A DNA stretch of 64,000 bases from Utricularia gibba (lineage: Eukaryota > Plantae > Magnoliophyta), in NCBI GenBank assembly GCA_002189035.1, contig NEEC01000010.1, positions 806,001-870,000 of the forward strand, given 5' to 3'. The notes beneath the pieces are model-generated. The model did no database searches, had not been told where the DNA came from, and saw only the letters and a program-made list of their open reading frames with translations. Position numbers and translations under genes: made by a program. Within the stretch, counting starts at the first letter, position 1. Each line of letters opens with the position of its first letter. Positions 13,881 to 64,000 of this stretch are shown here, piece after piece.

Positions 13881-15008
13881 ATGTTGCCGTTTCGGAATCC
13901 AATTCCATCAGCAGACCATTCCTTCGTTTCCCTTGCTTCACAAGGTACCCACTTTGTTTATCTTCTTCACAAGTAATTATTTATGATAGTAATTCATACC
14001 TCAGGCTTTTCAGCAGGCAATGCGTCATCATCAAGTTCTCTGATCTCTCCTAGAATCAACCTTAGTGCAGAGTTCAGTCGTGCCCTCAATTCAAGGTCTT
14101 TTGGTGAGATTCGAAGAACATTCACTGAGAACTTTTCTTTTGGTGACTTAGAAGCTGGGCAGTTGGATGCCTTGGCCGAATCTCAGCTTCTGAAACCAAG
14201 CCCTGAGTATGTTCAGAAGGCTCTTTTGCTGATTAAGCGTGAATCTCTTGCTCATCTTGTTGCTGAGTTCTTCAATGAAAGCGAGAAGGCGCTACGGTTA
14301 TGTGTAGTTGTGTACGGGAGAGTTCAACAAGCTCGTCAAATTTATCAGCCCATACGTGATGCCCTTCATGACATTCCCCTGGAGTTCAATTGGGATTCTT
14401 GCTCCCTGGCCTCGCCCAAATGCAAGTTTGCGGTCGAATCTTTCCTCCAGTGGGATAAACTGGGGAACCCCTTTTCCTCCATCGATTCAAGTAGATTCGA
14501 TAGCATCTGTGGAAACCTAAAGCGGCTCGGACAGGACCTTGCCCATTCCAAAAGGTCCAAATCGAAGAATCTCTCCGGTGGCTTTCGCCAATGGTACAAT
14601 TGTGTAAGCTCCAGTGTTAACTGCACGTCCCCTATTCCTCTCCGAAGGCTTGCCCGGAGCCGCCCAGACCGGGAACAGGTTAGCCCATCTTGCTCACAGC
14701 TTGCAAAAGCTGCTTCAGAAGGTGCTCTGTTTGTTCATCATCTGAGCACCATTCGTCCCCTGGTATCCCGTCTTCATTCCACTGTCGAAAGCGACAAGGA
14801 TCTCATTCGATACCTTCGAGTCGGGCTGGGCGAGGACATGGACAGGTACGCCATCCACGAGGCACTGAAGCATCTCCAAACAAACCGGCCAGGTTTCGAT
14901 AACTATCTCTTGGAACTTGAGGATCACTTGATGTTGTGCTGTTCAGATGTCAAAAAGGCAAGAGTCCGCCTCTTCCAGGAGATCTGCGGACACTCCAACT
15001 CCATGTAA
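13881..15008 (+). CDS. UPF0496/DUF677-family protein (At3g19330-like), divergent, ~355 aa, 2 exons
   Basis: Exon 13881-13944, a 60-nt GT-AG intron containing a stop, then 14005-15008 in frame. Family-like blocks: PRINLSAEF, LQWDKLGNPF, STIRPLVSRLHSTVESDKDLI, LELEDHLMLCCSDVKKARVRLFQEI. Confidence 0.8.
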
Positions 15009-32246: not shown

Positions 32247-34036
32247 TGATAAACGAAAAATATTGCAATGTCGTTAATTTATAAATTTTTCTATCAAATA
32301 AAATTTATAAACCTAATTCACATCAAATCATATGAAAAATATGAGCATAGAGGATTAGGGCTGAACACAAGAAGTTAGATGCTTGCTATATGAAAGTCAA
32401 TATATATAATCAGTGTCACGTTAATAGATTTGATTTTAACAAGGTAAAGTTGCGATAAAATACAGTAAAGAAAAGTGACATACTTGTGAACTCGATTGTA
32501 CCTAAATGAGATGGGTGTGCCTTGGGACTCCTAAGGCTCGCATGCTTATCATTAAAATAACATCACATATACCACAAATCATATATCTAACAAGCAAAAG
32601 TCTAGGTGATGAGCCCCATGAAGATAATGAAGTGTATTTGAAGAATGATGAGGAGTTTGTCCAAGTGAACACATTAGAAACAAAGATGATTCCACCAGGA
32701 CCAATGACTAGGAGCAAGACAAAGATGGTTGAAGATACACTTAAGGCTCTACTTAATACCATTGGAATCAAACATGGGCTTGAAGACATCCCATCAAAAG
32801 AGCTCAACTACTTGAAGGTGGATTTACCTTAAAGCATTGGGCTTGCTAGACTTTTCTATTTCATTTAGTTTGGGCTATATAATGTTAGAGCCCAATTCTA
32901 GAGTATAAATACTCTAGAGATGTTCTATTTCAGGACTTTTAGTCATTTTTCATGTATGTGGTGAGGATTCTCCTCCTCTTTGAGTGCTTGTATACTCTTA
33001 ACTTATCAAGCTTTGAACTTGTGGCGTTCTAGGATTATCACTTCCAATCACTTCTCTTTTCTGAAGTGTGGCTGCTAATTTTCTTTGTTTCGAAGTTTGG
33101 TTGCATGAGATTCATTCTCTTGAGGGTAGACTTGAGTAGGTTACTTTCTAAGCTTCAGAATCATCTCTTGTTCGTGGGTTGCTAATCTCAATAGATTAGA
33201 GGGTCACATCACTAGATCTACCAAAACTATTGTTTTCCCCCTAATCTTTGGTCTACATCTAATTAGAGTTGTTAAAATGAGTGTCACTACTTCCACCTCC
33301 TGAACCTATCCTGGTTTGTTAAGAAAGTGGTGTGATCTATTGTTAGCAAGGTCAAATGATTGACTAGCACATTACACCCTTTTTCCCCAAGTTACCCTTC
33401 TAAGTGCTTAGCCACTCATAGCAAGGAAAAGTAAAACATTTTTATAACACATTCTAAACAACATTCTAGTCTCAAAGTTAAACAACAACAAAAGATGTAT
33501 AACAGAGCATAAACAGTAAAATGTTCACTTAGGGAAAACTAAAACTAAAACTAGTCTCAGCTAGAAATAGTGTTCGTCAAGAATGAAAGAAAATCTTCAA
33601 AAGGGAAACTTGTTCTTCTGGATCATCATCCCCTCTCTTCTTGAAGTTCTTGTGGTCGGGGGATCTTTTTCCAGAAGTCCCTATTCTCGTTCAAAAATGG
33701 TCTTCTCCTTCTTCTCTCTCTCTCATCATTTCCAAAAATCTCCTTTTCCTCTTCCTTAGGATTTGTTTATACTTCATCCAGCTTTTTGCCCATATTTTCT
33801 ATGATTGCACTGTTCTTTTCTGGCTTCTCGGGATTTGGGGTGGCTTTCAATCGCTGCATTGCTCAAAGTAACTATTAGAAACAAGGTTGAGACTAAATCT
33901 ATGTTTGTACTTCATCCAGCTACATACGACTGCCGAGTTAGTTATAAAAACATAGGAATTCATGCTAGAACTCGAGTTTTGTGGCAAAATATTAGAAATT
34001 TTCCTACTCTTAAATATTCAAAAATATGTGTTATTA
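32247..34036. mobile_element. Athila-like solo LTR (copy A, ~1.18 kb net of the nested insert) with perfect 5-bp TSD ATATC
   Basis: atatc|TGATAAACG...GTGTTATTA|atatc. Homologous along its length to 55385-56559. The family call rests on resemblance of termini and size only. Confidence 0.8.
32607..33211 (+). mobile_element. CRM-type (centromeric retrotransposon clade) solo LTR nested in copy A
   Basis: TGATG...CATCA termini and TSD ctagg/ctaga. The uninterrupted site in copy B reads agtctaggtctacc. It encodes the CR-motif-like peptide GPMTRSKTK...LKALL. Confidence 0.8.
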
Positions 34037-36023: not shown

Positions 36024-37399
36024 ATGTACCATCAGCGCCAGCCGGGCCAGAGGATGACTCCTGAGAGGCAGTTGTTTCCTCGAGGCATGAGCGAGGTATC
36101 TGGGGATGCAGAGCTTGTTCTCTCGACTGATGCGAAGCCGAGGTTAAAATGGACACCGGACCTACACCAGCACTTTGTAGAAGCAGTTAATCATCTGGGA
36201 GGAGCAGAGAGTAAGCATAGAGAAAATGATTATTTCTACTGCACTCAGTTGCTTTACATTGTTCATAACTTACAGAGGCAACACCGAAGTCAGTGTTGAA
36301 ACTGATGGGAATAAAGGGATTGACCTTATATCACTTGAAGAGCCACCTTCAGAAGTATAGGATGACTAAAAGCCTCCACAGGCAAGCAAATGTTACAAAC
36401 AGCAAAGCAGGTAATGGATCCTGCATCCTCTGGAGTTTAGCTTTGATGATTGCTGATTAATCATGTTTAAGGAAATGATGACAGCCATTGGGACAAATGC
36501 TACCAGCATGAGCAACCAAAGCACCGCAGCTCAAACAAATAAGTTAGTGTTAAAAAAGTTCCACACATTTCCCTTGTCATTTATCAGCTGAGATATGACT
36601 GAGAGTTACGCATGTCAGAAATCTTCACCTAGGTGATGCGATACAGATGCAAGAAGGAGCACAAAGAAGGTTGCATGAACAGCTAGAAGTAAGAACAAGC
36701 TCTCTACCTTCACCAAAAACCGCATTTCTACAGTTGGCTTACAGCCATCATCAGGTACAACGACACTTGCAGCTGAGGATGGAGGCCCAAACTAAGTATT
36801 TGAAGTCCGTACTTGAAAAAGCAGAGAGAACCCTCGCTGGGCAGGACCCTAAAATTAAAACTCTGGGACAGAAGGTTAAGTTTGATCTGCTGCCGCATGT
36901 TTCCACACAATTCCACAACTCTGAACTTCCAAGGTTTAAAGAGCATAAGGAGTATTTCCTGCAGAAACATGTAATACCTCATGTACCTGCACATCCAATC
37001 GATAAAGAATCATCCAGCGGTCCGATGGATGTTAAGGCGATCAATAGTGATGCCCCTGCAGATAGTGACAACGAAAACTTCATGCAGAAAAGACACAGTG
37101 TTTGGACTGAAGATCAGAAAGATCGTCGAATTTTTTTTTCACCCGCAAACCACAATGCTGAAAAAGGATCTGCAACAGATGTGAATTCCACCAAATTGTC
37201 AATGAGCATTGGCATTCGGGAGAGCTCATGGAAAAGTAACATCACCTACTCAGAAGAACGAACTGACGCAATCAATAAAAATGCATCAGGTCCACAGAAG
37301 CAGTCGTGTTCCTCAATGCCAGACTTCTACATGTACAAGGAAAACAACAATACATCAAGTCACATGAATTTCGATATAAATGGCTTCCTCTGGAACTGA
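36024..37399 (+). CDS. MYB-CC (PHR1-like/GARP) transcription factor, MYR1/MYR2-like, 5 exons
   Basis: Exons 36024-36210, 36276-36410, 36485-36542, 36619-36688, 36755-37399, all phase-consistent. Motifs LVLSTDAKPRLKWTPDLH, LTLYHLKSHLQKYR, LHEQLE-VQRHLQLRMEAQ. Confidence 0.9.
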
Positions 37400-44150: not shown

Positions 44151-45291
44151 CTAAGCTGCTACAACTTTGGCAGAGAAGCTCTTTGGATCTGAGCATGGGG
44201 ACACGGAGTACTCCATCTGCTGCTTCTTCAACCTTGACTGGCACTTGGCTTCCTTTTTCTCGATGGAGATTTGCTCATCCCGGCACTCTGAGCTGCAGAA
44301 TGCCATGTCTCCTCTGCACAGAACTAGATTTCGATTATACACAGACGCGGCAATGGCCTTCCATTGATGCGAGAGCAATTCACATTCCATTCATTACTTA
44401 CTCAGGTTCTAAACCTTGTTATACTCGGACAAGAAATGCACAGATGAAAAATGGGACAGAATGAACGATCTTCTTCTACAGAAAAGAACACCAAAAGGGG
44501 TTCAAGCCCAACTTCTAAGAATTCTTGCAATCGAATGCATGGAAAGTCAGTTGCTTAACCCAACTCTACTTGCTTAAAATGACAGCATGCTAGGATTCGC
44601 TACTGCTACAAATGAACAGAACATGAACTCAAGATGCGGATACGACATCATCGCCAAATGAAGGCAATGAGTGATCTATTTTCCTCATAAATTACACCCA
44701 TATTCCTACAAAGTGAGAAACTTGTGCCACGGAAGAATCAGTGAGAAGAGACTGTGTATACCTGTACATAAAAATATCCAACCCTTGAAGCATCTTCTTG
44801 CAGAGAGAGCAGTAATTCAGAAAATCAGAAGCCATGAGCTCACCAAACGAAGAGCTGGGCACAGCCTTCGTGCCGCGACTCCCACTAAAAGAAACATGGG
44901 TTGACCCAATAACGCTTTCAGCGGACACAGATCCGAAGTATTCTCTTTTCTCGATCACATTCTCCCCAACATGAGAAATCACGCATGTGTACTCATCCGT
45001 TTTTTCCCATCCAACATTCCCCCCTCTATTCTCCTTAAAAAAGCCGTTTTTACCCAGAATCGGAATCGCGTTCGATGCGGATTTCGGAGATATCGCAACG
45101 ACCGCTTTCCTGTTCAGATCCGGATCTCCACCGCAACGGTGATCGTTCACGGCGGCGAGAATCCCAAGCCCCACAGCCCCATCTGGCTGCTCGAAATTCC
45201 TAGGAGATTTTCGGGCACTGCTCTGTCTCTTGAAATCGGTTAGGTTTAGGAAGGAAAGGTTCAAAGAGAGTTTTCTCTTTGTTCCTTCCAT
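44151..45291 (-). CDS. FCS-like zinc finger (FLZ/DUF581) protein, ~230 aa, 2 exons
   Basis: Exons 44762-45291 and 44151-44313. The zinc finger [27 protein letters not shown] is split by the typical intron. Upstream GLGILAAV and EYTCVISH motifs. Confidence 0.92.
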
Positions 45292-45956
45292 AACAGAAAA
45301 CACGATCTACTTCACTCACCCAGAATCCAAGGTACCACCTTTCAAGCCCAGGGAATCAAAAAACCGAAGCTTGAGCAGATCTTGGGGGAGAGAGAGAAAT
45401 TGGTAGATCAGCCATTCCTCCGCTGCTGCTCTTCTCTCTCCCCAAAAAATTATCGGGGTGCTTCCAGAGCCGAAGGAACCCTTTTTACTGTTTTTCTTTT
45501 ACTCTTTTTTCTATAGGATGGATGAGAAATGACAAAAAATATAAGAATAACAGCGAACGTTATTGGTAAAGTAAACGACGGAGAAGGCAATAGATATCGA
45601 ATTTGTTATATAAGTGGAGCTAAGGTGGGACAAAATCTCCAATGGAAGTATCAGAACTGAGGCTACATCTTAGGATTTATGTCAAAAATGATGGAAGATT
45701 GTAAGAAAAACAAGGATGTACAAAATTGTTGTAGGAGAGGCCGTTTCAGTAAGAGCAATGAACTACGATAGGATACTTTCTTTACTTCTGTTCCAGGCAT
45801 TCTTGGCCATGAAGCTCTGACGACGACACTAGAAATTTGGAGAAGAGTTCACCTGCGAAGAGTTATCATCAATCTCAAGAACTGATCTTTCTCTATTTGC
45901 GGTGAATCAAGTTGACATGTACTCACGTATGAATGGCAAGATTGCTGAATTCCTCC

Positions 45957-48584
45957 TCATGGAATTGTGCTTGCTGAAAACATGTTCATCGACTGTTCCC
46001 CTAAGGTTCGCAATCTGTTGAGCTCCGGTAACACGACGGTCCCGAGATCCGGCCTATCTTTTTTCCTCAACTCGGTGCACTTAAGAGCCATCTTTGCAAA
46101 ACTCAATGCCTCTTCTACTGGCCAATCATGAACTGCAGGGTCGAGCATTTCAGAGAAAGTTCCACGGTCAATAGCTCTTTCCACATAATGAGTTAAACCC
46201 ATTGGAGGTTTGGCTGTTATGATTTGTAGTAGCATTACTCCCAAGGAGTATACATCGGATTTGATTCCCAACATGCCAGTTTGCTGGTATTCGGGGTCTA
46301 TGTAGCAGAAGGTTCCGGCTGCTGCGGTCATGTGATATTGTGTCACACTGTCAGCTACGGAAGGAGGTACAAGCCTAGACAACCCCACATCACTGATCTT
46401 GCTCACAAAGTTACTATCAAGTAGAATGTTTCCTGGTTTTAGATCTCGGTGGACTAAGGGCTCTGGTTTTGTTTGGTGAAGGAAAAGAAGGCCAGCGGCT
46501 ATCTCTGCTGCTATTTTGAACCGGATCTGCCAAGAGAGGACCGGAGTGTTTCCTCGTCGGAACAACCGATCGTCCAAACTGCCGTTAGCCATATGTTCAT
46601 ATACAAGGCAACCATACTCCGGGCAAGCTCCAAGAAGGAGAACCATGTTGGGATGCCTAATGCAACTCAAAACTTCAACCTGCATCAAAGTATAGAAAGT
46701 TTGAGGCTGTGTTTCTTATTTTATCTGGTTTTTTTGGTTTGTATTCACCTCTTGCTGAAACTGTGATCTTCCTTGAGCGGCATCAGGACGAAGAACCTTT
46801 ACTGCTACCGGTGTGTGATCAAGGTGGCACTTAAAAACTGGACCATATCCGCCTTCTCCAATTTTAAGTGATGCAGAGAAGTTCTGCGTTGCGGCTTCGA
46901 TTTCCTCTATTGTGTATTTCCGATAACGAACGCCTACATCCGAGAACTTCTCCATCATCATCTTCCTCTCCTCCACTTCCTTCAGTGCTTTTCTCTCAGC
47001 ATCTATTCTTTTTTGAGCTTCAAGTTCAGCTATTCTCTGAGCCGCTTCAGCTTTTTCAAGAGCAGCCCTGCATTTAGCCTTTTCCTTCTCCGCGATCGCT
47101 AACGCTGCTTCTTCAGCTAGCCTTGCCTCCTCGAATCGTTGCTCTTCTTCAATTTTCCATCGGTGAAGTTCTAGGGCCTGTGTAAATGCAAATTTCAACA
47201 TTTTCTTCTCCTGAATACATGTATTCTGGCTACACAAATTTTACTTTTTGTTTTGCCGAGAGTGCTTCCTTGCAAGCTGAACTGTACATGTCCATTGTTT
47301 GCTTGAGTTCCTGCTTGAGCCTTCTCATCTCAGCTTCTACTTCTTCCTGCATTTACACTTCAAAATCATAAAACAGAAATCACTCAAAGTTCCCTATGGA
47401 TGTTCATTTGCTCACCATGCTTTGGGAGCCTGACAATGAAAAAGCTTCTCCTTCATAGGAGTTAGTTGAGAAGACACCAAAGTTGTCCTTTGATTCCAAC
47501 ATATTTTGATTGACGTATGAAGATCCAAACCCATATCGATTCTCCATTTCGAAGTTACTTAACGTACGAGGCAGCATCATCATCATTCCCTGATCTTGTG
47601 CTCTAGAAGTACGATCACTGCATGGTCTGCTGGAGCTCACAAAAGACAGGTCACTCTCAGGCATCGGAAGTTCTCCAAGCGCACGAATAGAGCTCCTGCC
47701 TCTTGTAAAAGGTGATCTACAACAAATGCAACATTCCGTTCTACTCTCACTTGGTCTGATCAAAATTTGTATGGGTAGCTGATGCTTAACCTTATTGTAT
47801 CAGTGTCCTCGGTGATGCTTCTAGCCCCATATGGCGACAGATGTGCTCCCCGCAAGGAGCCATCGCTTGGTGGTTCGGCGGTTGCTTCACGAGCTCCGTC
47901 TTTGGCAAACGGTGATGTAGCCGGCCTAGTAGAGGCCATCTTCCCCTTGGCAACGACAAACACCGTGCAAAAATCTGGTGCAATCTTAGTAATTGTCCCT
48001 GATACATCAGCACTCTTGATCCCCCTGTCAGGATAGATACTTGTAAGTACTGCGCCTAAGCTAAGCAAAGCGAGCATGGCTTCTCTTCTACAGTACCTAA
48101 CGAATCCAGTCTTAGCAGAGGATCCCACCACCAACGTCTCGATCATGTTGCTCTTCACATACTCAGAGATGGCCCTAGCCACGTCTGAATCCTCGAGCGC
48201 AACGTCAGTGACTTGTATCTATTGAACAATCATGTTACATTCCAGCAGAGATGGCCACATGAGCTGTTTAAGTTTCTTACATCCTTGCGAGTGCAGAAGC
48301 ATCGGAAGGGAAGGAAGATTTCTTTGGCGTGGTTGTCAACTGCTGCCTTTCCTGAGAGTTGGAAGATTTCTTTGGCATGGTTGGAGTTTATATGGAATGC
48401 AGGAGTGGGTGATACTGATCTGGATGTGAAACTCACCTGGGTTGGGAGCTGGGGAGGCCCTCTGTCTGACATGAATCAGGGTGGCGCATTTGCCTTTGGT
48501 GAGGAGATTGTCGACGGCCCACTTCAGCGCCGCTTGGCTTCCTTTGTCTTTGTCCACGGCTACTGCAACTGTCTCCGGCTTCAT
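45957..48584 (-). CDS. Receptor-like cytoplasmic Ser/Thr kinase with N-terminal USP-like domain and coiled coil (RLCK-IXb/PUB35-like, no U-box seen)
   Basis: VAVAVDKDKGSQAALKWA, FLPFRCFCTRKD, RYRKYTIEEIE, IGEGGYGPV, VAVK, HRDLKPGN, ISDVGL, GTFCYIDPEY. The ORF stops shortly after the kinase domain. Confidence 0.9.
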
Positions 48585-52771: not shown

Positions 52772-53830
52772 GGCCTCGTTGGCGGAATGCCCCTGTGTAA
52801 AAAACAGGTTTGCTGAATACCCCGAGTTCTAAAAGTATTGTCCAAATACGCTTGTTTTGAATTTTTTATTATTTTTATATAAATATATTAAAAATATACA
52901 GTTTGTAATGTATAAATGATATTTATTCAATATTTATATGTATATAATATCAAAAAATTAAAAAACAATAATTATTATAAAAACATAAACATAGAAACAA
53001 CAAATAATTCAATAAAAGTCATTTGACATAATGTTTTTAAAAATGTAATTAAAGATATATATATATATATTTTTTTTATTTATTTGTATCTAAATATTTT
53101 CTTATTCAAAATTTTAATTTTGAATACAATTTTGATTTCAAATTAATTCCATACTTTAAAAATTATAAAATCAAAATTAAAATTTTTATTGCAAAAATAT
53201 TTTTACAAAAACATGTCTTTAATATAATCATAACTTACATCTATAACAAATACAATATTAATCATATACTATTTTAACTATGGATTACATGAATATGAAT
53301 CAAATAATAAATATTTATCATTTAATTTATTACATGTGATTTATGTACATATAAATGTAAGATATGCTTTAGTTTATTTATTTAATTTGTATTTTATTAA
53401 TATCTGATTTATAATGGAATTTATGTAATCGATTTATTCATAAAATTTTTAAATATTATACTTAATGTAAAAAAATTGTATGTAACATAATTTAAAAAGT
53501 TTATTGAAAATATAATAATAAGAGAGAATTATTTATCGTATTATTATTTAAAAATACTTTTATAAATGTATTAATAAATTCAATTGAAAATATAAAAAAG
53601 TAAATTAAAATTTATTTGAAAAAATATGTGTATAAATATATTTTTTTACAAATACATGTATTTTTTTTCCCATATATTATTCATATCTATTTGTTTTATT
53701 ATTTTTTCATACAAAAATTAGGGGTATTCAACAAATAGAACAAAAAGATAGGGTATTCTACAAAGGAACTGAAAAGGTAAGGTATTCAGCAAAGGAGATT
53801 TTTACAGTGGGGTATTATGCTAAATTAACA
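52772..53830. mobile_element. Non-autonomous Mutator-like element with degenerate TIRs and AT-rich interior
   Basis: tttgctgaatacc (52809-52821) is the exact reverse complement of ggtattcagcaaa (53781-53793). The TIRs carry ~29-bp-spaced GGTATTC subrepeats. TSD not identified. Confidence 0.65.
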
Positions 53831-54576
53831 TTCGAATAGACATTAGGAATAATGAGAGGACCATAAGGTGTAGCATGGTTTATAGAACCTTGGTGAGTGA
53901 TGGAGTGGTAACTATAATCACCTATAAAAATCATACTATTTCCACAATTATCAGCATCAGATGCCACATGGGCAGCACCTCCATCATCAGAAGCCCCAAT
54001 ACTAGATTGTTGCATCATGTTTGAGGCTTGGTTCTTCATTATTAGGCATGTGGCCTTGATCAAGAGTTGACCCTGGTATCTAAGGAGTGAACTTAAAAGT
54101 CTAATGAGCAAAATTAGCAAGTATTGGCATAACATCACTGCAACGATCATAATAATGTGCAGCCGTGTGATCAATTCGACTACGAATTTGGTAAGTAGGA
54201 AGTGAGAAGTGACCACCATCTCGTTCTGCACGGCCAAAATTTCAACCACCCCCAAGATTCCAAAAATTACCAAAATTATTAGTTCCCTGAAATCGGGAAT
54301 TTCCACCACTGCCAGAGAAGGCACCTTGCAGATAACCACTAGTTGCATCAGAATATTGATTTGAATAACTGTAATTTTGATATGCAGAATTACGACCACA
54401 ACCACGACGACCATGACCCTAAAATTAGGCATTGGCACCACCATCACTACAACATTTTCAAGTAAATTTAGTGTGTAAAAACATGTTTTGGGCCTATTTT
54501 GCATCAGTCTGCTTGTTGGAGTGAACTTACTATTCATCCAGGTCGAGGAATGGTCATCCCATTTGGGCTGAGCCAC
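53830..54576 (-). mobile_element. Degraded Ty1/copia gag zinc-knuckle and protease remnant
   Basis: Degenerate knuckle PTYQIRSRIDHTAAHYYDR, and protease-like DDGGAAHVASD...IFIGD...ITHQGS...LIIPNVY in a different frame. Confidence 0.65.
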
Positions 54577-55384
54577 ATATTTTGACCATTCTACGCAGTA
54601 TTTATTAGTCTAGTGGTAAAATGAGAATTATGCATCTATATAGGCGAGGAGATAAGAAAACCAACGGAAACAAGGAACGAGGAGAGCGAAGCCTCCCCAA
54701 GGCATGGAATAGGGGCAGGTGATCGAGTAGAGAGAGAGAATGAAGATTTCAAACGTAGGGAGAGATTTTTCGGTGAGTTTGAACTAGTTTCAGGGATGAA
54801 GGAGGAACAGTTCCAGTGTGACAGTGGAACTTACCTCCAACGCCTAGAGCTCGTGGAATAGAAATCTGTCTGTGTGAAGAAGACGACAGAAGCAGTTCTT
54901 GAGTGACACTGGAGCTACATCCATCGTCCAAAACGACAGCATAACACTTGAAACCTTCCTAGCTAGCTTTAGAACCAATCTACACGAGAAGAAGAAGATG
55001 AACGATACACTAAACTAACTTAGAGACTTGAACAAACACTTTACTCTCTGTATTTTATATCCGTGCTTACTTTCATGAACATTCTCGTATTTTACATTTC
55101 CAACTTGAACGTTTACCTTGTTTGAATGCCTTCAACTTAGCATGCTTTAGGTTATTTCTTCAACTTAGCCTGCTTTAGGTTGTATTGTTTTCACATGTAA
55201 ATCAAAACATTGACTAAAGCATGCTTAGATTATTTCTTAAACATGGTTAATTTTTGTATTAAAGTGTAATATTTATTTTTTAACTTTGAGAAATGCTGTT
55301 TTACGTATTCTATTGCTTGTCTTTAGTGTAGAAACCCTTTCCAGAATTTTATTAATTTCTTTAAAGTAGAAAGCCATTACCCGA

Positions 55385-56559
55385 TGATAAATGAAAAATA
55401 TGAACGTCGTTAAAATGCAAATTTTTATATCGAATAAAATTTATAACCTAATACATATTGAAGCAAAATACAATTATGAGCATAATGATTAGGGTCGAAC
55501 ACGAAGAATAGGTGATTATCATGTTATTATCAATGTATGTAATCAATGTCATACTGACAGATTTGATCTTAACTAGGACTAAGGCAGAATTACGATGGAA
55601 TACAGTAAATAAAAGTAACAAACTTTTGAACTCGGTTGCTTCTAAAATGAAATAGGTGGTGCCTTGGGACTCCTAGGGGATGTATACTTATCACTAAACA
55701 TATTCATACAAACCATAAATCAAACATCTAACAAGCAAAGTCTAGGTCTACCCGAACTCTTGTTTTCTCCTAATTTTTGGTCTACTTTTAATTAGGATTG
55801 TCAAAATGAATGTCACTTCTTCTCCCTCCTGGATCTATCATGATTTGATAAAGAAGTAGTGTAATCTATGGTTTACAAGATCAAATGATTGATTAGTACA
55901 TTACACCCCTTTGACCCCAAGTCACCCCTCTAAGTGATTAGTCACTCATAATAAAGGAAAAGAAAGCATTTATAACATATTCTAAGCAACGTTTGGATTT
56001 GAAAACTAAACGACAACATAAGATGCATAACAGAACCTAAACAGCAAATTGTTCACATAAGAAAACTAGAACTAATCTCAGCTAGAAACAGTGTTCTTTA
56101 AGAGTAGAAGAAATCTTCAAAGGAGAGCTTGCATAATGGTTTTATCTTCTTTGTATTCCATGGTTATGCTACTCTCTCCTACTAGATCTCCCTTCAAGAA
56201 TTGTTTTTCGTGTTCTTCAATAGAGAGATATTTTCTCTTTCATCATTATTTTCAAAATCTTTTTCTTCTCTTCCTTGGAATTTAATTATACTTCTTTCAG
56301 CTTTTTTTCCATATCCTCTACCATTTCAATGTGCTCTTTTTGACTCCTAGGGAATTGAGTTGATCGACAATTGTTGCATTGCTTCAGGAAACAATTAAAA
56401 TTGATGTTGGGACTAAATTAGATTTAGTCCCAACTAGGAATAAAGCACATGACTGCAGTACTAGTCGCAAAAGCATAGAAATTCATGCTAGAACTTGGGT
56501 TTTGTGGCAAAATATTAGACTTTTTTCTACTCCAAAACACTCAAAAATATGTGTTATTA
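55385..56559. mobile_element. Athila-like solo LTR (copy B), nested in an older LTR-like repeat (~54600-56740)
   Basis: cccga|TGATAAATG...GTGTTATTA|cttga. The duplicated right end at 58344 is followed by an exact cccga. Confidence 0.8.
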
Positions 56560-57199
56560 CTTGACAAAACCCTTTGTTTAATCCGGCTTGCGGCATATGA
56601 CTTGCAATTCAAAATCATTTGCTCCTTGTGGATCGATGTGGACTTGACACTATTGCATTATTTTCTTCATGAATATTATGTAGAATACTTGTTGAGTTTT
56701 ATAAATTTTATTTGATGGAAAAAACTTTTAGAAATGTAACACCTTTAGAATTTTACGTCCATCACAGGGGATCTTGCTCTGCATTAACACATCCAATCAG
56801 CTATGAAAATGCCAATTCTAGAAACACCTTGTTTTGAATTCGCAACACCATCTTGGTAAAAATCGCCAAGTGATTCAGGTGCACCTTACATTTTTATTCC
56901 TTTAAAAAAACAACTTAGTTTTATTATTAAATACGAGTAATGTTATTAAAAAATAAAAATGTAGAAACACGAATTCCTTTAAAAAAACAATTTACATTTT
57001 TTTTATTTTTGTCCTCAATTTTTATAATTGATATTCTGTAAATAAATAGAATATTTTATAAAGTATATTTATTGGACAAAAACATAGCAAAATTGGCAGT
57101 ATTTGCAATCAGACTTAAATCCTGACATAAAATTTTATTTGACATGACATGAATGTTTTTTTAATGTTAAATCACATATTCATTATATATTAATGACAG

Positions 57200-57680
57200 T
57201 GGTAGTATTGTGAGGTCATTGACCAGTTTCCTGGGTTCGCTTGCATGATATTGGCAAGCTTTTCACTTATTCATCAAGTCCATAATATCATGCTTCATGG
57301 TTGGCCACTAATATCCACTTCTCAATGTCTTTTTGCATAGGGATCATATGCCGATATGGCTACCGTACTCCCCTTCATGCCAATCGGCAATAGGCTCCTG
57401 AGACTGCTCTCTTCCAATACATCTTAGCAAGGGCCCACAAAAAGCTTTTTATAGAGAGCTCCCTCGAGCATCAAATATCTTCATGCTCTAATTCCCATTT
57501 TTCGAGGCTTTAGCCTATCGGTTGGCTTTTCCCCCATTTGTAGGAACTGAATATATAGTTCCATCCAATCCTCATGAGGGCTCAGCTGAGGAGAGATATC
57601 ATTCACGGGTTGATGACAGATGTGATTTACCGCTTGTAGAGTTACTGAAGGTTGGTCTTGTAACCGAATTACCACACTTC
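57200..57680 (-). mobile_element. Degraded Tat/Ogre-type gypsy pol fragment (integrase zinc-binding region)
   Basis: DWMELYIQFLQMG...RA*RYLMLEGALYKK...GY*WPTMKHD...ACQYH. Confidence 0.75.
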
Positions 57681-57699
57681 CTTCTCTCAGATCATGAAA

Positions 57700-57720
57700 C
57701 CCCCCCCCCCCCCCCCCCCC
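57700..57720 (+). repeat. Poly-C tract (21 nt)
   Basis: Direct reading of the sequence. Confidence 0.85.
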
Positions 57721-60341
57721 GCAAACCGAGCCAGGCTATCTACCGATATGTTCCTTTCGTGAGCTATGTGTGATAACGTGAACTCTCTGCCGATATGTTC
57801 CTTTCATGGCATAACAGAACATAAGCAGTAAATTGTTCACGTAAGAAAACTAGAACTAGTCTCAGCTAGAAACAATGTTCTTCAAGAGTAGAAGAAATCT
57901 TCAACGGAGAGCTTGCATCATGGTTTCATCTTCTTTGTCCTTCATGGTTCTGCTACTCCCTTCTACCAGATCTCCCTCCCAGAATTGTTTTTCATGTTCT
58001 TCAATGAAGAGATATTTTTTCTTTCCTTATTATTTTCAAAATCCTTTTCTTCTCTTCCTTAGAATTTGATTGTACTTCCTTCAGTTTTTTGTTCATATCC
58101 TCTGCAATTTCACTGTGCTCTTTTCGACTCCTAGGGAACTAAGTTGGCCGACAATTGCTGCATTGCTCTGGAAACAATTAAAAATGGTGTTGAGACTAAA
58201 TCATAGATTTAGTCCCAACTAGAAATAAAACATGCAACATTCAGTACTAGTCGCAAAAGCATAGAAATTCATGCTAGAACTTGGGTTTTGTGTCAAAATA
58301 TTAGACATTTTACTACTCCTAAACACTCAAAAATATGGTTATTACCCGAAAAAACCTTCTGTTTAATCCTGCTTACGGCATATGACTTGTAATTAAAAAT
58401 CGTTTGCTCCTTGTGGATCAATGTAGACTTGCCACTATTGCATTATTTTCTTCATGAATGTTATGCAGAATGCTTGTTGAGTTTTATAAATTTTATTTGA
58501 TGGAAAAAACTTTTAGGAATGCAACACCTTTAGAATTTTACGTCCATCACAGGGGATCTTGCTCTGCATTAACACACCCAATCAGCTATGAAAATGCCAA
58601 TTCTAGAAACACCTTGTTTTGAATTCGCTACACCATCTTGGTAAAAATCGCCAAGTGATTCAGGTGCACCTTATATTTTTATTCCTTTAAAAAAACAACT
58701 TACATTTTTTTTTCATTTTTGTCCTCAATTTTTATAATTGATATTCTGTAAATAAATAGAATATTTTATAAAGCATATTTATTGGACAAAAACATAGCAA
58801 AGTTGGTAGTATTTGCAATCAGACTTAAATCCTGACATAAAATTTTATTTGACATGACATGAATGTTTTTTTAATGTTAAATCACATATTAATGAAACAT
58901 GTTGATATTTAATGTTGTGCATTATATATTCAATTTAATATAGTAAATGATATAAATACAATATTATGCTTTTTATTCCAAAAAAGATTTTAATATAAAT
59001 ATCTATTATGTATATTATATTAATATTGTGAAGTATACTATTACTAATTTTTTAAAATAATAATCATGTGCAAGCGGAATGGAACCAAATCAATGAATGC
59101 CTGGTTGGCTGCTTCTTGTCTTCCATAAATAAACACTTATGAGGGTTTCGGTGGTGATGCGGGAGGGATGGGTGCTCTCAGTCTCCATTCATACCCATCA
59201 TAATTCAATTGCACTGCTTTCCCTGCCCACCCCCAATTTTATATTTGGTTCCTAATCTTTTAAAAAAAATCGCGAACAAAATTAATATGAGATATGAATA
59301 TGATAAAAAAAACCTATACAATTCATTTCATATGTCACACTTCCATCTATTTGAAAAACGAGTAAATGGAAAAAACAGATATCTAATAAATATAAAACAT
59401 AATAACAAATTAAGAAAAATAAGAAAAGGTAAACACTTTACACTCTGATGGGCGTGGGTTACCGTGGGTAATTAAAATAAACCACGGGTAATGTGTTATT
59501 TAAATAAATAAATTTATTTTATTTGATGTATTTTAATGGTAATTAAAATAGTTATGGGTATTAGAAATGAAGTAAATTAATTTGTAAAACAATTAAAATA
59601 AATTAAAGTAAACCCTACAATCCACCCACCAAATAATCCATGCCCTTATTCCTTCCGCCGCACCACCACCACCTCCTCCTCCTCCTCACACCGCCGTTTG
59701 GCGGGAAGTCCCAGACCGGCGTGGGCCTGTCGCCGTCGCCACCACAGCAGCCTCCATCGACTCAAGTTCCGCCCAATTCTTTTGCAACCAAGGTATGGGT
59801 TTGTGCGAAAATTGTTTATGTCTTTAATTTAGGTTTTTTGGATTGTTTTTTATTCTGATATTGGTGGGAATTTAATTTTAGGGTTTGGAATGATTTAAAG
59901 TTTAAAGGTTCATGTAAGATTTTATTTTTTATAGTCAATTGAAGAAATGATTTCTTTATTATTTGTCTAAAAAGCGTTTTTTAATCCAATGATAATGATT
60001 CGTCTTTATAAAAATGATTTTTACGTAAATAAATAACTTTTTATTTTATTAAATGATGCATTATGTAAAGAAATGATTTACTTTTCATTTAAACAAGTAT
60101 TTGCTATGTAAATAACTTTTATTGTTACAAAAAATGTTTTTTTATTTTTCTTTTTTTTTTAAGAATGATTTATTATTGGAATAAATGATACTTTTCTTTT
60201 CTAAAATATTCATTCAATAAGAAATAATTTTTTTAATTTAATAAAGAAATTTTTGGTGTAACAAAAGATGAATTTTTATTTGCTTGTTTTTAAACATTAT
60301 TTGTAATTAAATAACTAGTTTTCATTTATATTTGCTTGTAG

Positions 60342-61748
60342 TGCGATAGAAGTAGTCGATAATGTGAGGGTAAGGTATTATGTTCCTGAAGATTATACGT
60401 TATTCATGCCGGAGGAATGGGAGACAATTGACGATGAGCCACCTAGCAGAGTAGGTGCCACTGGGTTCTCAGTTGCCTTGAGCCATATGGAATGTGGTCT
60501 TCGACTCCCGCTTCACTCGTTCAACGAGATAGTGCTGCGAGCTATGGGAGTGCCTCTCGCCCGTATCACTCCTCAGTCGGTAGGGACGATTAGAGCATTT
60601 ATCATGATGTGTGAGGAAGAGGATGCGCCATGTGATTTGCGTGCCTTCCGTTCAATTGTAGAGGTCATTGCTCTACGCGATGGCCGCTTCTCGATACGAC
60701 CGCTCCGGGGGTCGGGTATCCACTTCGGGTTCCCACAGTCATTCGGCTCATGGTGGCGCACTTTTCTGTGGATACGTCCACCTTTGGAAGACGTGTATCG
60801 CATCCCTCGAGTTTTGGAGCCGGGTGTCACAGGCAAGATAAAAGGTAATATTTTTTGTTTACTTGTTCATCTATTTCAATTTTAATGTGGCTTCATTTCA
60901 TCTCTTTGTCTCCTAGGCGTGAGGGCATATGATAAGGAGACCCGTGATTTACTATTGTCAGCTTGGGTGGCCAAGGGTTATACGATGCCCATGATTGTAA
61001 GAAGTCTGTAGCTCACTAACTGGGAGCCTTAGTGCTCGAGAGATTAGGCAAGAATTCTGGAAGAAAACTGTATAAAAAAATATATTTGGTTACATATACG
61101 ATGCCCATCATGATCACTGATGAGGAGGGTATGTAATTTTACGTGTTATTCAAATTTGAGTATTGCTTTTGAATGATATGTTCTAGGTTCCCAGCGGCTT
61201 ACAAGGGGTGCGCCTGCATCGTATAGTCGTGATCCTCGACGTTATCGTCAGGTTACTCCCGACGATGACATCGATCTGGGCGATGGGGAGCCATCCCATG
61301 ATATGCCACCTCAGATTCATCCTATGGAAGCTGAAATCCAGCGATTGCAACGGGAGTTGGAGGCACGGGATCAAGAGGTGGATGAGTGGAGGAGAAAGTA
61401 CATGGAACGCGATGAAGCGCTCCTTCAAACACAGACCAAGACCAGAGAGGAGTCTGCAGAGCGCTCCTCAACTCATGTACCACGAACCGTGCGACGGGTG
61501 ATGAAGTTGCTCATTCTAGACGTGAATGGCTTGCTTGCTCATGTCATTCATGGGCAAGTCAACAGGTCTCCAAATAGACGGATGGGAAACGGGACAGCCT
61601 GTAAGTTATTTAATTTCCATTGTGACTTTTATAATGCTTTCTAATCCCTCCCGTCTTTGGATGCAGTGTTTATTAGGCCGCATGTTTCGAGGTTCCTGCA
61701 ATTATGCTTCGCCTATTTCGACGTCGCTGTATGGTCGTCAAGGTTATG
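60342..61748 (+). pseudogene. Spliced chimeric ORF: Transposase_28 (TRP28)-like domain + coiled coil + N-terminal part of an FCP1/NIF-type HAD phosphatase domain; disrupted and 3'-truncated
   Basis: Exons 60342-60844, 60917-61128, 61187-61600, 61667-61748 with GT-AG introns. Motifs MECGLRLPLHSF...RITPQS...WWRTFLWI, EAEIQRLQRELEARDQEVDEWRRKY, KLLILDVNGLLA, FIRPHVSRFLQLCFAYFDVAVWSSR. Confidence 0.75.
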
Positions 61749-61779
61749 GTACCTATTACCCTCTGTTTCATTATTTCTG

Positions 61780-64000
61780 TCAATAGATAAATTCCTCTCA
61801 TCAGGTTCCGTGTAATGAGTAGAAGTCAATATCTGTTGGTCTGATACCATATTTTCACTATCTGTTGGTTCCCAATTGCCTTCAACATTTGGCTGAAGTT
61901 CACGATTTGTATTCTGATGAGAGTCTGATTCTGCTTCATGTGTATCGATTGTCTCTTGGCTTGGGTGTTTTCTTTCAAATGTATTTTCATCAATTTCCTT
62001 GAGCTCGAGGAATAGGCCCAGTGTATCTTTTCCTTGATTCTGTACTGGTTCAATGTAACCTGAACTCCAATCCCAGGCTCTCAATTCATCAAAGACCACG
62101 TCTCTGCTAATTCTTATTTTCATGCTCGACAAGTCCAATACCCTGTATCCCTTGGTTATATCACTGCATCCTAGATGGACACCTACTAGTGCTTTCCTGT
62201 CTAATTTCCTTCTTCTTTGTTTTGGGATGTGAGTATAGCATACACAACCGAAGATGCGGATGTGATCAACCCGTGGAATTCTCCCATGCCACATCTCAAA
62301 TGGGGTTTTCTTTTCGATCAGTGCCTTGGTGGGCAGTCGATTCAGGAGGTACACGGCGGTGTTGACTGCTTCACCCCAATAGGTCATTGGTACGGTTTTC
62401 TCATACATCAGACATCTGGCCATTTCAATTATAGTTCTGTTTCTTCTTTCACTTACGCCATTCTGCTCGTAGGGTGCAGTAAACTGGTGAATAATCCCTT
62501 CTCGTTCACACATTTCAGTGAACTCATACGGTATGTATTCACCACCGTTATCAGATCTAATGTACTTAATTCTTTGCCTGCTTTGGTTCTCAACTTGAGC
62601 CTTGAAGGCTTTGAAACAGTTCACCACTTCTGATCTGCTAGGGATGATAAATATCCAGCAGTATCTAGTGTAATCATCTACGAAAATTAAGAAATACCTA
62701 TTTCTTGTAGATGTTGAGATGTTTATGGGTCCATATACGTCACTGTGGATTAGCTCTAGCTTCTGGGTGGTGATCCAGGTGCGTTTTCCGAACGGTCGTC
62801 TAGAGAGTTTACCGATTTGGTAGATTTCGCATATCCTATGGTCTTGTTCCAGTTTTGGTATTCCCTCCATCAGGTTGGATTTTGACGCATGAGCCAGTGA
62901 GGAGTAGTTCACATGGCCAAACCTTTTGTACCAGAGTGAGGCATCATCTTTAGCTGCAAAACAGGTGTCAGTTAGGTTTTTATCAGTTTGAAATCTTATA
63001 GGAAAAATTCTGCTTTCCATCTTGACTTCAAGAAGAAGTCTTCCAGATGATGAATATATGCTACAAAGAGCTCCATTGAAGGTGACGTTCAGCCCTTTAG
63101 AGGTAAGCTGTCCTACACTCAGAAGGTTGTGGGAGGCTTTGGGTACGTAGTATACATCTTGTATCTTTAGTATGTGCTCGCAAGTTTCAAGTTGTACAGT
63201 CCCTATCCCATGTGCTCTTATTAGTCGTCCATCAGTGACTTCTATTGATTTCCCATTCAGTGGCTTGTAGCTTGTGAATGCGCTGAATTTGTGAGTTAAG
63301 TGGTTGCTGCATCCACTGTCTATAAGCCACGTTCCTTTGTTTGTGATGTCGTTAGTGATTGAGAGTATGTGTCTTTGTGCAGCTTGTAGATATCAATGAC
63401 TTCCTTGGCATCAGAAAAATAGCATACAGAGTTCAATGCAGTAGAGTTTGATTCTTTCTTGTCATCATTTTTCTGTGCGAATTTTTCTTCAAATCTCTTC
63501 TTGCATACCCTTTCGATGTGGCCCTTCTCCTTGCAGAAGTTGCAGATCTTATCTGGGTTATAGAAACAACTCGAAACTGGATGGTTCCTCTGCTTGCAGT
63601 GTGGGCATTCAGGGTATGCTCCTCGTTTTTCAACTCTTTTTTGAGACTTTGCCTGGAAAGCTTGCTCAGTTTCGTCATGCCTTTCATATGTCTTCTAAAC
63701 TTGCTCAAAGTTGTAGAGTGTGTCCAGCAATTTTTCGTAGTTGTATGTGGTTAGAAGACCAGTTGTGGATAGCATCCCAATGCATGCTCTGAAGTCCTTT
63801 CCCACACACTTAAGGATTTTGTCTTTAACTCTACCATCGTCAACAGGTTGTCCCAGTTTTTTTAGCCGCTTTGCCACTGCACTCATAGAGAGCGTTAAAT
63901 CACTGATGGACTGACCTGGTTTCAGGCTGAGGTTGTTGAGAATATGCCACTGCTTTGCTATTTCCTTTTGTCGCCTTTCTGTTGTCATGGCATAATTTTT
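61780..64000 (-). mobile_element. Ty1/copia gag-protease-integrase, lacking RT/RNase H/3' LTR, continuing beyond the window edge
   Basis: Two zinc knuckles (CPHCKQRNH...C, CNFCKEKGH...C), WLIDSGCSNH, LWYKRFGH, LIHSDVYGP, IRSDNGGEY, QNGVSERRNRT. One in-frame TAG in gag and one frameshift before the protease. Confidence 0.92.

What the first reader, a model, noticed from the sequence alone, without database searches (positions are those of the whole stretch)
60342..61748. Spliced fusion of a retrotransposon accessory domain (TRP28) with a captured FCP1-type HAD phosphatase domain
Seen: four exons whose splice phases are consistent once one 116-bp insert is removed (~365 codons). They encode a Transposase_28-like domain, an acidic linker, a coiled coil and, in the same exon with no break, KLLILDVNGLLA followed by FIRPHV.RFL..CF..FDVAVWSSR. 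Established: TRP28 plus coiled coil is the architecture of accessory ORFs of Tat/Retand gypsy elements, and the DxNGLL motif marks the plant At2g36540-like FCP1/NIF family. From memory, the two introns in the HAD part sit where that host family has them, implying DNA-level capture. Inference: a transposon family may have recruited a CTD-phosphatase-like domain into its accessory protein, possibly acting on host transcription or silencing. I do not know this architecture as described.
Basis: partly seen in the sequence, partly recalled or inferred. Interest (0 to 1): 0.85.

Follow-up and report, generated by a model that had tools for sequence, protein, structure and literature searches.

The report
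Dead truncated TRP28–phosphatase-like fusion gene copy
This is a broken, cut-off copy of a real spliced plant gene that joins a transposon-type domain of unknown function (TRP28) to the start of a phosphatase-like domain. The architecture is unusual and I found no published description of it, but this copy cannot work and adds little beyond confirming the gene structure.

Summary
Four GT-AG exons on the + strand (60342-60844; 60917-61128 with a 116-bp insert; 61187-61600; 61667-61742) read as 364 codons without a stop once the insert is removed (chance about 2e-8). The insert is flanked by a perfect 14-bp direct repeat.

- **TRP28:** exon 1 passes Pfam PF04195 (38.1 bits, cut-off 26.2). It folds confidently (pLDDT 90) into the TRP28 shape, which has no solved relative.
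- **NIF:** the end of exon 3 joined to exon 4 passes PF03031 NIF (27.8 bits, cut-off 21.8), but covers only profile positions 1-61 of 160.
- **Truncation:** at about 61750 the gene abuts a truncated Ty1/copia on the opposite strand.
- **Catalytic motif:** it reads DVNGL, not DxDxT. "Phosphatase" is therefore not shown.

I found no transposase, Myb gene, gypsy element or terminal repeats next to this copy. I also found no public protein, metagenome contig or paper with both domains.

The scan found this gene before on other DNA of the same genome. Several follow-ups call it the five-exon third gene of a PIF/Harbinger family; I could not test that here. My verdict is a dead, 3'-truncated copy of a real but undescribed fusion gene. 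The locus is ordinary and the family is moderately interesting.

The parts
59640..59792 (+). Possible non-coding leader exon. It is G+C 0.63 and CT-rich, and is followed by a GTATGG donor and a 549-bp intron of G+C 0.19 that ends at the AG before 60342.
   Evidence: The phase of ATG 59640 does not fit exon 1, so if the exon is real it is 5'UTR. This is a weak inference.
60342..60844 (+). Exon 1: extended TRP28 (Transposase_28) domain, 167 codons.
   Evidence: PF04195 scores 38.1 bits against a cut-off of 26.2. The family-invariant G, R and P of 'GLRLPL' and the later conserved P are kept. The AlphaFold2 model has pLDDT 90. TM-score to Streptophyta TRP28 clusters is 0.84.
60917..61128 (+). Exon 2 (60917-60992 plus 61109-61128), broken by a 116-bp insertion.
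   Evidence: The frame is restored only when 116 bp are removed.
60993..61108 (+). 116-bp disabling insert: 102 new bases plus a second copy of the 14-bp TATACGATGCCCAT. It brings an in-frame stop.
   Evidence: There is no other copy in the window, no tRNA and no Rfam match.
61187..61600 (+). Exon 3: disordered acidic/proline linker, a roughly 49-residue helix (coiled-coil type) and the start of the NIF domain with motif I read as DVNGL.
   Evidence: Translation. Helix at residues 45-93. Only weak generic coiled-coil Pfam hits. NIF profile positions 1-61 when joined to exon 4.
61667..61742 (+). Exon 4: NIF domain up to motif II (VAVWSS), with donor AG|GT at 61743.
   Evidence: PF03031 profile positions 39-61 of 160. 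The joined piece scores 27.8 bits.
61743..61800 (.). Breakpoint zone. The NIF gene stops here, in intron 4, and the copia integrase-RT linker begins on the other strand.
   Evidence: No further NIF-like reading in any + frame downstream. The copia ORF runs up to here on the - strand.
61750..64000 (-). Truncated Ty1/copia running off the window: gag, Pol_BBD, GAG-pre-integrase, integrase core and SH3-like domain. It has no RT or RNase H.
   Evidence: There is no YVDD-type RT motif anywhere in the window.

Best explanation
The stretch is a dead, 3'-truncated copy of a real multi-exon gene. That gene encodes, in order, an extended TRP28 domain, an acidic disordered linker, a long coiled-coil-type helix and an FCP1/NIF-type HAD domain whose motif I reads DxNGL instead of DxDxT.

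This copy keeps exons 1-4. It is cut inside or just after exon 4 by a rearrangement that joined it to the integrase-RT linker of a copia element lying head-on. It also carries a 116-bp insertion with a 14-bp target-like duplication in exon 2.

Because 1092 coding bases still hold no stop or frameshift apart from that insertion, the copy died recently or was copied recently from a working gene (inference).

At family level (inferred, not shown here), the gene is an accessory or cargo gene of transposons. Other notes of this scan place it as the third, five-exon gene of a PIF/Harbinger family.

Its product most likely works as an oligomeric (coiled-coil) adaptor. The TRP28 part would bind nucleic acid or chromatin. 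The NIF-like part, lacking the general acid/base Asp, would bind phospho-Ser/Thr targets such as polymerase CTD repeats, or turn them over only slowly.

This locus itself can make no such protein.
For: Shown:
- Gene structure, splice phases and the 364-codon open frame.
- Exon/intron G+C contrast.
- PF04195 above threshold, family-invariant residues kept and the TRP28 fold.
- PF03031 above threshold for the spliced piece, profile positions 1-61 of 160.
- Long helix in exon 3.
- Exact 14-bp repeat around the insert.
- Copia domains on the opposite strand up to the breakpoint, with no RT in the window.
- The locus is present in 14 sequencing runs from 6 studies of one organism.

From the literature: TRP28 is so far known only from transposable elements, as an antisense ORF of Retand gypsy elements, with predicted DNA binding (PMC11963269).

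Leads only: scan notes s1-197775, s1-186724, s1-212863, s1-202795, s1-219315 and s1-210026 describe the same five-exon fusion gene, many-copy, inside PIF/Harbinger and other DNA transposons of this genome. Four exons followed by a cut fits a five-exon gene.
Against: - No transposase, Myb/SANT gene or other Pfam family is detectable in stop-free segments of 50 or more residues across 47.3-60.1 kb upstream.
- No inverted or direct repeats bracket the gene.
- There is no second copy in the window.
- No protein with both domains turned up in the 1.84-billion representative library, two further protein searches, two Atlas searches or two metagenome scans.
- The loci of three of the closest public TRP28 proteins hold no NIF.
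- The TE-cargo part therefore rests on unchecked notes plus TRP28's known distribution.
- The binding-not-catalysis idea rests on general HAD enzymology recalled from memory, not on a test.
Confidence: 0.7

Rival explanations
1. It is an antisense accessory gene of an LTR retrotransposon. Like TRP28 ORFs in Retand elements, the gene would lie downstream of pol, antisense to gag-pol. One internal deletion would then have removed RT, RNase H and the NIF 3' end together.
For: - The gene is antisense to, and directly abuts, gag-protease-integrase of an LTR retrotransposon.
- An antisense gene would keep its introns through retrotransposition.
Against: - The element is Ty1/copia by domain set and order (Retrotran_gag_2, Pol_BBD, gag_pre-integrs, rve and SH3 all before any RT), not Retand/gypsy.
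- Both partners are truncated at the joint, as after an illegitimate recombination.
- No LTR is recognisable left of the gene. The 5' LTR lies outside the window, so no comparison was possible.
- Scan notes place other copies in DNA transposons.
Confidence: 0.08
2. It is a pseudogene of a host (domesticated) TRP28-NIF gene with its own promoter and leader intron, not carried by any transposon.
For: - A G+C-rich leader-like exon with a donor, and a long AT-rich intron, lie upstream.
- There are no transposon genes or ends within 13 kb upstream.
Against: - TRP28 has not been found outside TEs.
- The fragment lies among nested retroelements and is truncated.
- No annotated plant protein resembles it at more than about 37% identity over a long stretch. 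That would be odd for a conserved host gene.
- Scan notes report many copies.
Confidence: 0.12
3. It is a one-off juxtaposition of TRP28 debris and a fragment of a host NIF gene, never a functional unit.
Against: - The coiled coil and NIF motif I share one exon with no break.
- All three introns are GT-AG with matching phases.
- There are 364 open codons (chance about 2e-8), against 14-22 stops in the other frames.
- TRP28 family-invariant residues are intact.
Confidence: 0.05

Closest known systems
TRP28 (Pfam PF04195, Transposase_28) antisense ORFs of Retand Ty3/gypsy retrotransposons (PMC11963269)
   Same: - The same domain, above Pfam threshold.
- The same invariant GLR.PL core.
- The same predicted fold.
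- A helical or coiled region follows the domain.
- Function unknown.
   Different: - Here TRP28 is in a multi-exon gene and is fused to a NIF/HAD domain.
- No Retand or gypsy element is present.
- The best public TRP28 relatives are only about 25-37% identical, and none carries NIF.
FCP1/SCP1-type CTD phosphatases and other NIF-domain (PF03031) proteins
   Same: The N-terminal third of the NIF domain matches: the beta-strand with the nucleophile Asp (LILD) and motif II (VWSS), at profile positions 1-61.
   Different: - Motif I is DVNGL instead of DxDxT, so the Asp+2 general acid/base and the Thr are replaced.
- The rest of the domain (motifs III and IV) is missing in this copy.
- phmmer finds no solved structure for the 61-residue piece.
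- From memory, Tim50 is a precedent for a non-catalytic NIF domain.
Transposons that carry host-derived or extra genes (Pack-MULEs; ULP1-protease genes of MULE/CACTA elements; two-gene PIF/Harbinger with a Myb/SANT partner)
   Same: It is an intron-containing, host-like domain inside a gene linked to mobile elements. According to scan notes it sits between the two usual Harbinger genes.
   Different: - The TRP28 + NIF architecture was in none of the papers found.
- In this window no transposase, Myb gene or TIR accompanies the gene.

Membership tests
Pfam PF04195 Transposase_28 (TRP28) | Profile match above the gathering score | tested here: met
   38.1 bits against a cut-off of 26.2, residues 45-104 of exon 1.
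Pfam PF04195 Transposase_28 (TRP28) | Conserved G-x-R-x-P core, later conserved P, and the shared fold | tested here: met
   G52, R54, P56 and P77 are kept in a 49-sequence alignment. The model has pLDDT 90. TM-score to TRP28 clusters is 0.76-0.85.
Pfam PF03031 NIF / FCP1-like HAD phosphatases | Profile match above the gathering score | tested here: met
   The spliced 61-residue piece scores 27.8 bits against a cut-off of 21.8, but covers only profile positions 1-61 of 160. Exon 4 alone scores 17.7 bits.
Pfam PF03031 NIF / FCP1-like HAD phosphatases | Catalytic motif I DxDxT (nucleophile Asp and Asp+2 acid/base) | tested here: not met
   The sequence reads LILDVNGLL. The first Asp is kept, Asp+2 is Asn and Thr is Leu.
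Pfam PF03031 NIF / FCP1-like HAD phosphatases | Motifs III (Lys) and IV (acidic pair), a complete domain | tested here: not met
   The domain ends after motif II at 61742. No continuation appears in any + frame before or within the copia.
Accessory ORF of Tat/Retand Ty3/gypsy elements | Location between pol and the 3' LTR of a gypsy element, antisense, as a continuous ORF | tested here: not met
   The neighbour is Ty1/copia. There is no gypsy pol or LTR around the gene. The gene has three introns.
Third gene of a PIF/Harbinger transposon (as in scan notes) | DDE transposase and Myb/SANT genes on either side, plus TIRs and a 3-bp target duplication | tested here: inconclusive
   No Pfam family appears in 71 stop-free segments spanning 47.3-60.1 kb and 63.0-64.0 kb, apart from copia parts and one Usp match. 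The downstream side is replaced by copia and runs off the window.
   No host NIF protein or gene could be fetched. The length window of the protein search excluded them. The three papers that name At2g36540 do not appear to concern the motif; I saw titles and abstract openings only.

The most novel reading that the evidence does not exclude
TRP28-coiled-coil-NIF would be a working transposon-encoded adaptor in this plant lineage, passed between or shared by several DNA-transposon superfamilies. Its catalytically altered CTD-phosphatase-like domain would dock on phosphorylated polymerase (Pol II, IV or V) or elongation-factor repeats. Its TRP28 part would hold the element's own DNA or RNA. The result would bias transcription or silencing in the element's favour.
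Probability: 0.15. Interest if true: 0.75.

Novelty: new variant of a known kind. Interest (0 to 1): 0.38.

Why it matters
TRP28 is one of the commonest plant transposon domains, and its function is unknown.

A gene that welds TRP28 to a CTD-phosphatase-like module would give a concrete, testable hint: TRP28 proteins may act at the transcription machinery. It would also add a new kind of accessory gene to plant DNA transposons.

This locus contributes one thing only. It is an independent copy showing the same exon structure and in-frame junction, so it argues that the fusion is a real gene. It is dead, it tells nothing about activity, and the scan already holds better-preserved copies.

Tried and rejected
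**Public relatives with both domains: all blank**
- Exon 1 against 1.84 billion representatives gave 46 weak hits. Of these, 45 carry PF04195 and none carries NIF.
- Exon 3 in the word-indexed protein search gave nothing.
- A TRP28 profile with a 485-residue first row gave 5 hits (Castilleja, Phtheirospermum, Cuscuta), all PF04195 only.
- The 61-residue NIF piece gave no candidate.
- Metagenome scans with exon 1 and with exon 3 found nothing.
- Atlas search by features, and by fold for exon 1, gave TRP28 clusters only; exon 3 by features gave no credible match.
- Genomic loci of P0001, P0002 and P0005 hold no NIF nearby. P0024 is not on record.
The full spliced protein has no reference and I did not type it, so full-length fusions may simply have been out of reach.

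**Extending beyond the window**
- The copia integrase ORF is not on record.
- Two window ORFs are not in the collection.

**Reads**
- (findings by place) widened my range 60342-61748 by itself to 58842-63248, which spans them. I note this openly.

**Other negative results**
- An alternative donor at 60998/60999 for exon 2 was rejected. It gives the wrong phase and a stop 13 codons into exon 3.
- ATG 59640 as the start codon was rejected on phase.
- The 116-bp insert as a tRNA-derived SINE: no tRNA or Rfam match and no other copy. Undecided.
- TRP28 fold against the PDB: Foldseek E-values above 1, and a best VIA Z of 3.8. No assignment.
- Findings search by sequence and by relatives was blank, which means nothing according to the operators.

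Full report
**What is in the sequence**

On the + strand, four G+C-rich blocks (0.46-0.53) are separated by short AT-rich stretches (0.26-0.35). Each stretch starts with GT and ends with AG.
- Exon 1 is 60342-60844.
- Exon 2 is 60917-61128.
- Exon 3 is 61187-61600.
- Exon 4 is 61667-61742.

Exon 2 is interrupted by 116 bp (60993-61108). The last 14 bases of that insert repeat exactly the 14 bases just before it. Removing these 116 bp is the only reading that keeps the splice phases consistent. It gives 364 codons without a stop.

None of 20000 shuffles of the same bases gave an open frame. The analytic chance is 2.4e-8, and the other frames carry 14-22 stops. The donor after exon 4 is AG|GT at 61742/61743.

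**Domain identities**

Exon 1 matches Pfam PF04195 (Transposase_28, TRP28) at 38.1 bits against a cut-off of 26.2.
- In an alignment with 48 public TRP28 proteins it keeps the invariant G, R and P of the GLR.PL core and the later conserved P.
- With that alignment, AlphaFold2 gives a confident model (pLDDT 90, pTM 0.83).
- The model superposes on Streptophyta TRP28 clusters of the Atlas at TM 0.76-0.85.
- It matches nothing in the PDB. Foldseek E-values are above 1, and the best VIA-align Z is 3.8.

Exon 3 encodes three parts:
- a disordered acidic, proline-rich stretch;
- one long helix at residues 45-93 (pLDDT 95-98 in blocks 50-80), of the kind that forms coiled coils;
- without any break, KLLILDVNGLLA.

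Exon 4 alone scores 17.7 bits on PF03031 (NIF), below the cut-off. The end of exon 3 spliced to exon 4 (61 residues) scores 27.8 bits against 21.8 and covers profile positions 1-61 of 160. The rise in score on splicing is itself support for intron 3.

**What the NIF part is not**

Motif I reads D-V-N-G-L where FCP1/SCP enzymes have DxDxT. The nucleophile Asp is kept. The Asp two residues on, which is the general acid/base in HAD phosphotransferases (established enzymology, recalled from memory), is Asn. The Thr is Leu.

Motif II (VWSS) is present. Motifs III and IV are not in this copy at all. Calling the domain a phosphatase is therefore unsupported. At family level a binding or very slow-turnover role is the more likely reading (inference).

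**How the copy ends**

Beyond 61743 no + frame continues the NIF domain. A Ty1/copia polyprotein reads up to about 61750 on the - strand. Its parts are gag (Retrotran_gag_2), Pol_BBD, GAG-pre-integrase, integrase core and the SH3-like domain.

Its RT and RNase H should lie to the left, exactly where the TRP28-NIF gene sits, and they are nowhere in the window. Both partners are thus truncated at one joint. This is the signature of a deletion or illegitimate recombination, not of a clean insertion.

The gene is dead three times over:
- it has no exon 5;
- it has a 116-bp insertion with an in-frame stop;
- it has no in-frame ATG before 60406.

A G+C-rich block at 59640-59792, with a good donor and a 549-bp AT-rich intron, may be a non-coding leader exon. 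This is weak.

Since the 1092 coding bases show no other lesion, the copy is young or was copied recently from a working gene (inference).

**Context**

- Stop-free segments of 50 or more residues on both strands between 47.3 and 60.1 kb give no DDE transposase, no Myb/SANT, no gypsy pol and no other TE-related Pfam family.
- A self-comparison of the window shows no repeats bracketing the gene.
- There is no second copy in the window.
- To the left lie a pair of 1.1-kb direct repeats (56025-57180 and 57809-58890), probably LTRs of a small element.

TRP28 ORFs of Retand elements are continuous, antisense and sit between a gypsy pol and its 3' LTR (PMC11963269). The antisense position next to a copia here is noted as a low-probability rival.

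**Other copies**

Every public search I could run was blank for a TRP28+NIF protein.
- The exhaustive representative search with exon 1 gave 46 hits at 22-42% identity, leaving aside one 20-residue repeat match. Of these, 45 carry PF04195 and none carries NIF.
- Three word-indexed protein searches found none.
- Two metagenome scans found none.
- Two Atlas feature searches and one Atlas fold search found none.
- The genomic surroundings of three public TRP28 genes hold no NIF.
- No paper holds PF04195 together with PF03031, or Harbinger together with NIF.

These blanks are weak evidence. The protein tools see only 0.55-1.75 times the query length. The full spliced protein has no reference and I did not type it. 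TE genes are also usually masked before annotation.

The scan has found this gene before on other DNA of the same genome. Several follow-ups describe a five-exon TRP28-NIF gene between the transposase and Myb genes of an abundant PIF/Harbinger family. Further copies are said to sit in hAT and MULE elements. Two such notes lie 1.7 kb and 12.5 kb beyond this window's end.

Four exons and then a cut fit a five-exon gene. I could not read that DNA, so I treat these notes as leads. They changed my reading from 'retrotransposon accessory gene' to 'DNA-transposon cargo, orphaned fragment here'.

**Expression**

Fourteen runs from six studies of one coded organism hold the stretch. None is on record as RNA. 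Four runs only guessed to be RNA hold 0.56-0.73 of the sampled words. Words lying wholly inside the exons make up 0.74 of the stretch, but two DNA runs give 0.75-0.76, so this decides nothing.

I kept those letters out of later searches. The exception is, where the findings tool itself widened my range across them.

**Verdict**

- The fusion is a real spliced gene architecture. I found no published description of it, and its TRP28 fold has no solved relative.
- This locus is a truncated, insertion-broken fragment without its transposon.
- It lacks the catalytic motif expected of a phosphatase.
- The same family has already been reported from better copies in this scan.

I rate the family-level idea moderately interesting and this instance low to moderate.

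Noticed in passing
window 56025-57180 and 57809-58890: Two direct repeats of about 1.1 kb, 91-97% identical. They start TGCAT and end ATTCA/ATTAA, with 628 bp between them. The spacer holds a scrap on the - strand (57484-57735) that by eye resembles gypsy pol; this was not tested. Related repeats at 75-80% identity lie at 32247-34036 and 55385-56121. This looks like the LTR pair of a small non-autonomous LTR element.
   Followed up: partly
window 61750-64000 (- strand): A Ty1/copia with gag, Pol_BBD, GAG-pre-integrase, integrase and SH3-like domain, but no RT or RNase H. It is cut in the integrase-RT linker exactly where it meets the TRP28-NIF fragment. Its 5' LTR lies beyond the window.
   Followed up: partly
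window 60993-61108: A 102-bp insert plus an exact 14-bp duplication of the target, with an A-rich 3' part. The long duplication would suit a retroposed fragment or filler DNA from break repair. There is no tRNA or Rfam match, and no other copy in the window.
   Followed up: partly
window 60343-60843 (protein model mbbe3c200720c): The extended TRP28 domain (about 155 residues) folds with pLDDT 90. It has no convincing match among solved structures (best Z 3.8). The fold of this very common plant TE domain seems structurally uncharacterised.
   Followed up: yes
window 53818-54609 (- strand): A 253-residue ORF that by eye resembles a decayed copia protease/pre-integrase region. It has no Pfam hit and is probably another old copia remnant.
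   Followed up: no
window 13983-15008, 36647-37399, 44692-45303, 45957-47237: Apparent host genes in the same window: a DUF677 protein, a MYB-CC (LHEQLE) factor exon, an FCS-like zinc-finger protein and a protein kinase. The TE-rich block begins near 49 kb.
   Followed up: no
runs X4, X5, X8, X9: Four small runs of one 2020 study, guessed to be RNA, hold 56-73% of the sampled words of 60300-61800. That is close to the 74% expected of a fully spliced transcript, but also close to the shares of partial-coverage DNA runs.
   Followed up: no
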